From positions 175,894,001 to 175,958,000 of the forward strand of contig OZ038378.1 in NCBI GenBank assembly GCA_964036045.1: a stretch of 64,000 nucleotides of DNA, written 5' to 3'. How positions within the stretch are numbered: position 1 is the stretch's first letter; the number at the start of each line of letters is the position of its first letter. This document shows, in pieces, positions 47,054 through 47,116 of this stretch. Source of the DNA: Eutreptiella sp. 'Long Island Sound 2002'. Taxonomy: Eukaryota; Protista; Euglenida. The notes beneath the pieces are model-generated. The model was not told the origin of the DNA and did not search any database. It saw nothing but the letters and a program-made list of their open reading frames with translations. A program made the translations under genes and the position numbers.

Positions 47054-47103
47054 TTTATCCTGAGTGCTTCATTTTCCACTCTGAGTTTCGTATTTTTGTT
47101 GCG
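47054..47103 (+). other. Tandem relict spliced-leader-like sequences
   Basis: 47078-47103 ACTCTGAGTTTCGTATTTTTGTTGCG and the weaker 47054-47076 TTTATCCTGAGTGCTTCATTTTC resemble the euglenid SL (approximately ACTTTCTGAGTGTCTATTTTTTTTCG, from memory). The proximal copy ends 13 nt before the ATG. Confidence 0.6.
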
Positions 47104-47116
47104 TGATGTCGGAGCG

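What the first reader, a model, noticed from the sequence alone, without database searches (positions are those of the whole stretch)
47054..47116. Tandem spliced-leader relics in front of an intronless gene: evidence of mRNA recycling into the genome
Seen: 13 nt before the ATG of the intronless GT15 gene lies ACTCTGAGTTTCGTATTTTTGTTGCG. It aligns with gaps to the euglenid SL (approximately ACTTTCTGAGTGTCTATTTTTTTTCG) at about 22 of 26 positions. Immediately upstream is a more decayed copy (TTTATCCTGAGTGCTTCATTTTC). The neighbouring channel gene has seven introns, and the window is rich in LINE RT remnants. Knowledge: tandem relict SLs are the signature of repeated mRNA-to-DNA recycling described in dinoflagellates. 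Inference: the same cycle may operate in this lineage, possibly over two rounds, producing expressed retrogenes.
Basis: partly seen in the sequence, partly recalled or inferred. Interest (0 to 1): 0.8.

Follow-up and report, generated by a model that had tools for sequence, protein, structure and literature searches.

The report
Worn double spliced-leader before retrogene
An intact, intron-free sugar-transferase gene of a marine euglenid alga has two worn DNA copies of the short tag that cells normally add only to finished messenger RNAs just before it, so it was most likely copied back from RNA into the genome, a route published so far only for dinoflagellates.

Summary
At 47078-47103, 13 nt before ATG 47117 of an uninterrupted 516-codon GT15 gene, lies a 26-mer matching the euglenid spliced leader (SL) at 22 of 26 positions. 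It is the best SL match of 128,000 positions in the window. A weaker unit (47052-47077) abuts it head to tail. Alone the proximal unit is modest (8 of 221 null windows reach its score). An SL-SL dimer model scores 20, against a maximum of 16.5 in 87 null windows.

The likeness stops at the SL exon end, so this is no SL-RNA gene copy. Two paralogues in the same genome and one metagenomic homologue carry canonical introns; this gene has none. An RNA read leaves the genome right after the AG inside the proximal unit, as if a fresh SL is now spliced there.

No poly(A) remnant, target-site duplication or close parental copy was found. The 5' unit is the more decayed one, the reverse of the dinoflagellate pattern. 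One round of retroposition is likely (about 0.75); two rounds are plausible (about 0.45).

The organism is probably Eutreptiella, not Euglena gracilis. The scan's notes report similar relic-headed retrogenes elsewhere in this genome; I found nothing on SL relics or retrogenes in euglenids in the papers I could search.

The parts
47052..47077 (+). Upstream, more decayed SL-like unit. It has an exact CTGAGTG core at 47060-47066 and now supplies the pyrimidine tract before the acceptor AG.
   Evidence: score 6-6.5; adjacency p about 0.007; the dimer model gains 6 over the monomer.
47078..47103 (+). Proximal SL relic, matching 22 of 26 positions over the full SL length.
47084..47085 (+). AG inside the proximal relic (SL positions 9-10); the likely present trans-splice acceptor.
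   Evidence: metatranscriptome read X1 record 5 fits 47085-47230 without a difference and has 5 letters unlaid beyond 47085. The X3 contig starts at 47094. 15 of the 19 nt before the AG are pyrimidines.
47104..47116 (+). 13-nt original 5' UTR between the SL end and the start codon. It holds an out-of-frame ATG at 47106.
   Evidence: 56% of Eutreptiella 5' UTRs are shorter than 15 nt (PMC3621762).
47117..48667 (+). Intact intronless CDS of 516 codons plus stop. It encodes an N-terminal membrane anchor, an EGF-like module and a GT15 glycosyltransferase domain.
   Evidence: gapless 406-aa alignment to E. gracilis P0002, 68% identity.
48668..48939 (+). Single-copy 3' flank, probably the 3' UTR. 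No A-run is present; a purine-rich stretch lies at about 48889-48935.
   Evidence: (depth 10-14 in X7).
45934..47014 (.). High-copy repeat block upstream (thousands-fold depth in DNA runs), ending about 40 nt before the SL units.
   Evidence: tables 2, 5 and 7.
48940..49607 (.). Repeat block downstream of the gene.
   Evidence: table 2.

Best explanation
The GT15 gene at 47117-48667 is a retrogene. A mature, SL-capped mRNA (SL, then a 13-nt 5' UTR, then the spliced CDS) was reverse-transcribed and inserted into the genome, so the RNA-only leader became DNA (47078-47103). Lacking a promoter of its own, the copy is read as part of a longer transcript and receives a fresh SL by trans-splicing.

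The second SL unit abutting the first (47052-47077) most simply records a second cycle. In that cycle a new SL was spliced on just before the old one, and that mRNA was copied back again.

Today the U-rich remains of the upstream unit serve as the pyrimidine tract, and the AG of the proximal unit (47084-85) serves as the acceptor. The mature mRNA would therefore carry a fresh SL plus an 18-nt stump of the old one.

Shown: SL-derived DNA ahead of the ATG, an intronless CDS, intron-bearing homologues, and transcription. Inferred: the reverse-transcription step, the number of rounds, and the exact acceptor. My odds are about 0.75 for at least one round and about 0.45 for two.
For: (1) This is the best SL match in the window and sits 13 nt before the ATG. 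The null rate is about 2.8e-7 per position.
(2) The SL-SL dimer scores 20, against a maximum of 16.5 in 87 null windows and 14 for the next best real place.
(3) The two units are each closer to the SL than to each other (scores 14 and 6 against -4), so they are not a recent local duplication.
(4) After the relic comes TGATG, not the SL-RNA intron start GTATA (PMC11170887). Only the exon part was copied, as expected from a spliced mRNA.
(5) The SL core is the same in E. gracilis (PMC6242988) and Eutreptiella (PMC3621762). The 13-nt UTR fits Eutreptiella's short UTRs.
(6) Homologues have introns. Same-genome paralogue L003 has a 419-nt GT...CAG phase-2 intron in the codon equivalent to R409. Metagenomic L002 has an acceptor at the same position and phase. 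Same-genome paralogue L004 is split into three or more exons 1.6-2.7 kb apart. P0003 is an exon-sized match (residues 264-312) with unrelated flanks. This gene runs uninterrupted through all these sites.
(7) RNA: an X1 read fits from 47085 and then departs from the genome. The X3 contig covers 47094-47362 without a difference.
(8) DNA run X7 carries 46966-49352 in one contig at single-copy depth, so the relic is genomic.
Against: There is no poly(A) remnant and no target-site duplication. No close intron-bearing parent was found; the same-genome paralogues are only 42-45% identical. The proximal unit alone is only modestly significant at window level (p about 0.04). Against two rounds: the 5' unit, which should be the younger, is the more decayed, whereas in dinoflagellates the 5' relics are the fresher ones (PMC6050394). 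The proximal unit also keeps its 5' part, although the internal AG now seems to be the acceptor. The 5 unlaid letters of the X1 read were not shown, so the SL junction was not actually read. In DNA run X9 a contig leaves this sequence upstream of 47137, which I cannot explain. No reverse-transcriptase remnant was confirmed in the window.
Confidence: 0.72

Rival explanations
1. Single round only. The proximal unit is a true SL relic of one retroposition. The upstream unit is not a second leader but an ordinary pyrimidine-rich acceptor region, or the product of slippage, that happens to hold CTGAGTG.
For: The upstream unit alone scores 6-6.5, a level reached by about 0.2% of all positions. It is more decayed than the supposedly older unit, and the proximal unit is not truncated at its AG.
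Against: The dimer model beats all 87 null windows by 3.5 points, about 5 sd above the null mean. The exact head-to-tail abutment has p of about 0.007. The units are not similar to each other, so slippage is unlikely.
Confidence: 0.3
2. Chance resemblance. The gene lost its introns by another route, or never had them, and the T-rich CTGAG-bearing tract is simply its trans-splice acceptor region.
For: The monomer score is reached somewhere in 3.6% of null windows. The retroposition hallmarks (poly(A), target-site duplication, parent) are missing.
Against: The position lies 13 nt before the ATG on the sense strand (about 2e-5). The dimer score is unmatched in the nulls. About 23 kb around the intron-bearing paralogues reach at most 10.5. 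E. gracilis acceptor tracts are C-rich with CAG, not U-rich (PMC11170887). The likeness covers both halves of the SL, not only the T-run.
Confidence: 0.1
3. The units are a fragment of SL RNA genes, or a chimera made by reverse-transcriptase template switching onto SL RNA. They would then derive from SL RNA or its genes rather than from leaders spliced onto this gene's mRNA.
For: Two full-length units head to tail look more like repeated SL exons than like the truncated relics of dinoflagellates.
Against: No SL-RNA intron follows either unit: the expected GTATA is absent and TGATG is seen after the proximal unit. Rfam finds no RNA gene. The spacing to the ATG is that of a normal 5' UTR.
Confidence: 0.06
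4. Assembly artefact: cDNA or RNA-derived reads were merged into the genome assembly.
For: None specific. L001 is the same assembly as the window, so it gives no independent check.
Against: DNA run X7 has one contig spanning the upstream flank, both units, the gene and the 3' flank (46966-49352) with no difference at single-copy depth. The units are decayed, not the perfect SL a cDNA would carry.
Confidence: 0.02

Closest known systems
Dinoflagellate DinoSL-relict retrogenes, or 'recycled processed cDNAs' (Slamovits and Keeling 2008; Song et al. 2017; reviewed in PMC6050394)
   Same: A genome-encoded copy of the spliced leader sits directly 5' of the coding sequence. More than one unit lies in tandem. 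The copy is expressed and apparently re-spliced at an AG inside the relic. The gene is intact.
   Different: The lineage is Euglenida, and the leader is the 26-28-nt euglenid SL. Both units here span the full leader length rather than being cut at the internal AG. The 5' unit is the more decayed, whereas in dinoflagellates the 5' relics are fresher.
LINE-mediated processed retrogenes of animals and plants (L1-type target-primed reverse transcription)
   Same: An intronless copy of a gene family whose other members have introns, sitting in repeat-rich DNA.
   Different: No poly(A) tail remnant or target-site duplication is detectable. Identification rests on the 5' SL tag, which those systems do not have.
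SL-headed LINEs and other SL-relic retrogenes noted by this scan elsewhere in the same genome (AI notes)
   Same: The same leader is written into DNA at the 5' end of a reverse-transcribed unit. Some of those notes report a second, stacked relic.
   Different: Those notes are unchecked by me. Several describe perfect or near-perfect leaders or a 16-nt stump; this locus has two worn full-length units.
Euglenid SL RNA genes (Tessier et al. 1991; 5' splice site GTATA, PMC11170887)
   Same: They carry the same 26-nt exon sequence.
   Different: Here no intron part follows, and a protein-coding ORF starts 13 nt later.

Membership tests
SL-relic retrogene (recycled trans-spliced mRNA) | A genome-encoded SL-like sequence on the sense strand, within normal 5' UTR distance of the start codon | tested here: met
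   22 of 26 positions match, 13 nt before the ATG. It is the best of 128,000 positions; the null rate is about 2.8e-7 per position.
SL-relic retrogene (recycled trans-spliced mRNA) | The likeness is confined to the SL exon, with no SL-RNA intron after it | tested here: met
   TGATG follows the relic, where the SL-RNA intron would start GTATA. Only 5 nt of the intron are known to me.
SL-relic retrogene (recycled trans-spliced mRNA) | The coding sequence lacks introns present in homologues | tested here: met
   L003 has a phase-2 GT-AG intron at the R409 codon, and L002 has an acceptor at the same site. L004 has two or more introns. P0003 is exon-like. The window gene is uninterrupted.
SL-relic retrogene (recycled trans-spliced mRNA) | A closely related intron-bearing parental gene in the same genome | not testable with these tools
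   Only distant paralogues (42-45%) were retrieved. The whole assembly cannot be searched by translated similarity here.
SL-relic retrogene (recycled trans-spliced mRNA) | Several SL units in tandem as a record of repeated rounds | tested here: inconclusive
   The dimer model scores 20 against a null maximum of 16.5, so a second unit is real. But the units are full length and the 5' one is more worn, unlike the published pattern.
SL-relic retrogene (recycled trans-spliced mRNA) | The transcript receives a fresh SL at or near the relic | tested here: inconclusive
   An X1 read fits from 47085 and has 5 unlaid letters. The X3 contig starts at 47094. The junction letters were not shown.
LINE-mediated processed retrocopy | A 3' poly(A) remnant and flanking target-site duplication | tested here: not met
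   There is no A-run within the single-copy 3' flank and no direct repeat pairing the 5' and 3' borders.
SL RNA gene or pseudogene | The SL exon followed by its intron (GTATA...) and the rest of the small RNA | tested here: not met
   There was no Rfam match in the window.
Glycosyltransferase family 15 (Pfam PF01793) | A Pfam match above the curated cut-off | tested here: met
   60.1 bits against a cut-off of 25, E 3.2e-16. The gene is 68% identical to E. gracilis EG_transcript_10388, which carries PF01793.

The most novel reading that the evidence does not exclude
The tandem relic is not only a fossil but a working, portable 3' splice-site cassette. The U-run of the upstream leader copy acts as the pyrimidine tract and the CUGAG of the next copy supplies the acceptor AG. 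Any recycled mRNA would then bring with it what it needs to be trans-spliced, capped and translated wherever it lands in a read-through-transcribed genome. That would explain why retrogenes survive so well in SL-using lineages, and why the proximal unit is better kept than the upstream one.
Probability: 0.3. Interest if true: 0.7.

Novelty: new member of a known kind. Interest (0 to 1): 0.55.

Why it matters
Spliced-leader relics are the only self-dating 5' tag that marks a gene as reverse-transcribed from mRNA. Until now this 'mRNA recycling' has been documented for dinoflagellates. Finding it in a euglenid, an unrelated SL-using lineage with a very large genome, would suggest that recycling follows generally from combining SL trans-splicing with reverse-transcriptase activity. 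It would also give euglenid genomics a simple marker for retrogenes and for how many times each was recycled. This locus adds an expressed, intact Golgi-type glycosyltransferase with two worn units, plus a hint that the relic itself now serves as the acceptor.

Tried and rejected
- An ungapped SL search with up to 3 mismatches found nothing in the window. An exact search found nothing in the five fetched loci.
- Rfam at gathering thresholds found nothing.
- A search for direct repeats pairing the 5' and 3' borders, and for A-runs, found no target-site duplication or poly(A).
- An exact-product look-up of the 516-aa protein found nothing. The 548-aa call (P0001) led only to L001, which is letter for letter the window, so it is not independent.
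- The word search with the N-terminal 130 aa, meant to catch transcript contigs carrying the 5' UTR, found nothing.
- The DNA of P0003's contig was not available. Its splice sites are therefore only inferred from the read-through peptides (FLPG before the exon, RCE after it).
- A third SL unit further upstream was tested and rejected. The score ending near 47051 is 2.5, a level about 3% of positions reach.
- Pfam scans of 30 ORFs for reverse transcriptase found none.
- BLAST of the flanks against the window found no further copies of the flanking repeats that could define their ends.
- I first took the organism for Euglena gracilis. I dropped this because of the 68% identity to the E. gracilis homologue, the identical reads in estuary metatranscriptomes, and the scan's own Eutreptiella notes.

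Full report
**What is there.** The window is 53.6% G+C nuclear DNA. A 13-nt spacer follows (47104-47116), then ATG 47117, the first in-frame ATG of an ORF that ends at TAG 48665-48667. The 516-aa product has a short basic N-terminus followed by a hydrophobic anchor, an EGF-like module and a GT15 glycosyltransferase domain (PF01793, 60 bits, E 3e-16). It aligns without a single gap over 406 residues, at 68% identity, to Euglena gracilis EG_transcript_10388 (P0002). The gene is therefore intact and has no intron in the conserved part.

**Which leader.** The E. gracilis SL is ACTTTCTGAGTGTCTATTTTTTTTCG (PMC6242988). The Eutreptiella sp. SL is the same with AC in front (PMC3621762).

The organism is probably Eutreptiella rather than E. 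gracilis, for three reasons:
- Estuary metatranscriptomes hold reads identical to the gene.
- The E. gracilis homologue is only 68% identical.
- Other agents of this scan call this genome Eutreptiella gymnastica. That is a lead I did not test further.

For the SL core the distinction makes no difference.

**Is the match more than chance?**
- *Proximal unit.* A global alignment to the SL gives 22 matches, 2 mismatches, one 2-nt deletion and two 1-nt insertions. In a semi-global scan of both strands it is the best of 128,000 positions (score 14; next best 11.5, driven by T-runs without the CTGAGTG half). Eight of 221 second-order Markov windows reach 14 somewhere. The window-wide p is therefore about 0.04, but the rate is only about 2.8e-7 per position, or about 2e-5 for the 60 nt before a given ATG on the sense strand.
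- *Upstream unit.* The unit at 47052-47077, which has an exact CTGAGTG, is weak alone (score 6-6.5). The chance of such a score ending within 5 nt of the junction is about 0.007.
- *Tandem.* An SL-SL dimer model scores 20.0 here, 14.0 at the next best place, and at most 16.5 in 87 null windows (mean 12.3, sd 1.5).
- *Independence of the units.* Each is closer to the SL than to the other (scores 14 and 6 against -4). This argues against a recent local duplication.
- *Third unit.* It is not supported.
- *Control loci.* About 23 kb around two intron-bearing paralogues reach at most 10.5.

**Not an SL RNA gene.** The SL-RNA intron begins GTATA (PMC11170887). After the proximal unit comes TGATG, and the coding sequence starts 13 nt later. 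Rfam finds nothing in the window. Only the exon part of the SL RNA is present, as in a spliced mRNA. The 13-nt spacer fits Eutreptiella 5' UTRs, which average 21 nt, with 56% under 15 nt.

**Introns in relatives.** The full HMMER search returned short products whose match to my protein is exon-sized.
- *L003.* The locus of P0020, on another contig of the same assembly, has homology to residues 297-411 and 410-448 in different frames. Read at the base level, the Arg codon equivalent to R409 is split AG|G by a 419-nt intron that starts GTCCCA and ends with a C-rich tract plus CAG.
- *L002.* This 516-bp metagenomic contig (59% identical over 83 aa) has a C-rich tract plus TAG acceptor at the same codon and phase. 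In this region it is about as close to my gene (68%) as to P0002 (66%), while my gene and P0002 are 76% alike. The intron at R409 therefore likely predates the clade that holds my gene.
- *L004.* A second same-genome paralogue has three exon-like matches (residues 115-181, 193-321 and about 322-449) in three frames, 2.7 and 1.6 kb apart.
- *P0003.* This product (NCBI assembly GCA_041443065.1, a 692-bp contig) matches only residues 264-312, at 88%, with unrelated flanks.

The window gene reads straight through all these places (codons 405-414 at 48329-48358). These paralogues are too distant (42-45%) to be the parent, and no close parent was found.

**RNA and DNA evidence.**
- *DNA.* Runs X7 and X9 are DNA. 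Depth is flat (10 and 34) over 47103-48940 and thousands-fold over 45934 to about 47014 and over 49274-49440. The gene is thus single-copy and sits between high-copy repeats. One X7 contig covers 46966-49352 without a difference, so both units are genomic.
- *RNA.* Four 151-nt contigs of an estuary metatranscriptome (X1) lie on the CDS with at most one difference. One of them fits 47085-47230 exactly and has 5 further letters that do not fit. That is what a fresh SL (ending ...CG) joined after AG 47084-85 would give. A 269-nt contig of a small 2013 library of the same organism (X3) covers 47094-47362 exactly, so the 3' half of the relic is in RNA.
- *Limits.* The 5 loose letters were not displayed, and contigs cannot show ends. 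The acceptor is therefore inferred, not read. Fifteen of the 19 nt before that AG are pyrimidines, contributed by the upstream unit.

**What is missing or awkward.**
- There is no A-run in the single-copy 3' flank and no direct repeat linking the borders.
- Under two rounds the 5' unit should be the younger. In dinoflagellates the 5' relics are the fresher ones (PMC6050394); here it is the more worn. Constraint on the proximal unit, which holds the acceptor AG and part of the mature 5' UTR, could explain this, but that is inference.
- The proximal unit keeps its first 8 nt. The second-round leader must therefore have been spliced on just before it, not at its internal AG.
- In DNA run X9 a 3571-nt contig matches only from 47137 onward, and depth suggests no cover of 47103-47136 in that sample. 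I could not follow this (note 3).
- I could not confirm LINE reverse-transcriptase remnants in the window.

**Mechanism and odds.** Most likely (about 0.75) a trans-spliced mRNA of a GT15 gene was reverse-transcribed and inserted, and the copy is expressed by read-through transcription plus trans-splicing. A second round is plausible (about 0.45). The rivals are a single round with a fortuitous upstream unit, pure chance, an SL-RNA-derived chimera, and an assembly artefact. They are listed separately with their tests.

**Comparison and novelty.** This works like the DinoSL-relict retrogenes of dinoflagellates (PMC6050394). It meets the 5' tag, exon-only and intron-absence criteria. It fails the poly(A) and target-site-duplication criterion of classical processed retrocopies. 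My paper searches found nothing on SL relics or retrogenes in euglenids, and the Eutreptiella SL paper does not mention relics. The scan's own notes report many such relic-headed genes and SL-headed LINEs elsewhere in this genome. I did not test those notes. This locus is one more, worn, example of a phenomenon that is new for the lineage but of a known kind.

Noticed in passing
window 47103-47137 (DNA run X9): A 3571-nt contig of DNA run X9 matches 47137-49301 only from its letter 1377, and the depth fits no cover of 47103-47136 in that sample. Run X7 is continuous over 46966-49352. This may be a strain or haplotype variant that replaces the start codon and both SL units, or it may be a contig mis-join.
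   Followed up: no
window 47106-47144: An out-of-frame ATG lies 2 nt after the relic and opens a 12-codon upstream ORF. It overlaps the main start codon and ends at TAG 47142-47144.
   Followed up: no
window 46597-46635 and 46894-46990: Runs of 7-14 G or C flank a recurring GGGGGGGAAC(C)GTCA(C) motif (a 39-nt repeat, 82% alike) inside the high-copy repeat block. Similar C-run/G-run/A-run junctions occur at 48940-48995 and 49650-49675.
   Followed up: partly
L003:5064-5941 (ENA ERZ25074135 ctg10879_39x_l): A same-genome GT15 paralogue (42-61% identical) has a 419-nt GT...CAG phase-2 intron with a C-rich pyrimidine tract. No upstream exons were found within 5 kb, so it may be truncated or have long introns.
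   Followed up: partly
L004:3183-8509 (ENA ERZ25074135 ctg10863_33x_l): A second same-genome GT15 paralogue (about 44% identical) is split into at least three exons separated by 2.7 kb and 1.6 kb. It includes the EGF-like module.
   Followed up: partly
window 47197-47280: An imperfect 36-nt direct repeat, spaced 48 nt apart, lies in the stem region of the protein and encodes DP(V/S)EPLK twice.
   Followed up: no
window 28158-28928: An ORF with a cyclic-nucleotide-binding domain (PF00027, E 2e-8) lies on the + strand.
   Followed up: partly
window 841-2478: A 545-aa ORF has a C17orf113-type zinc finger (PF25431, E 2e-9). It matches the hAT-like transposase noted by another reader.
   Followed up: no
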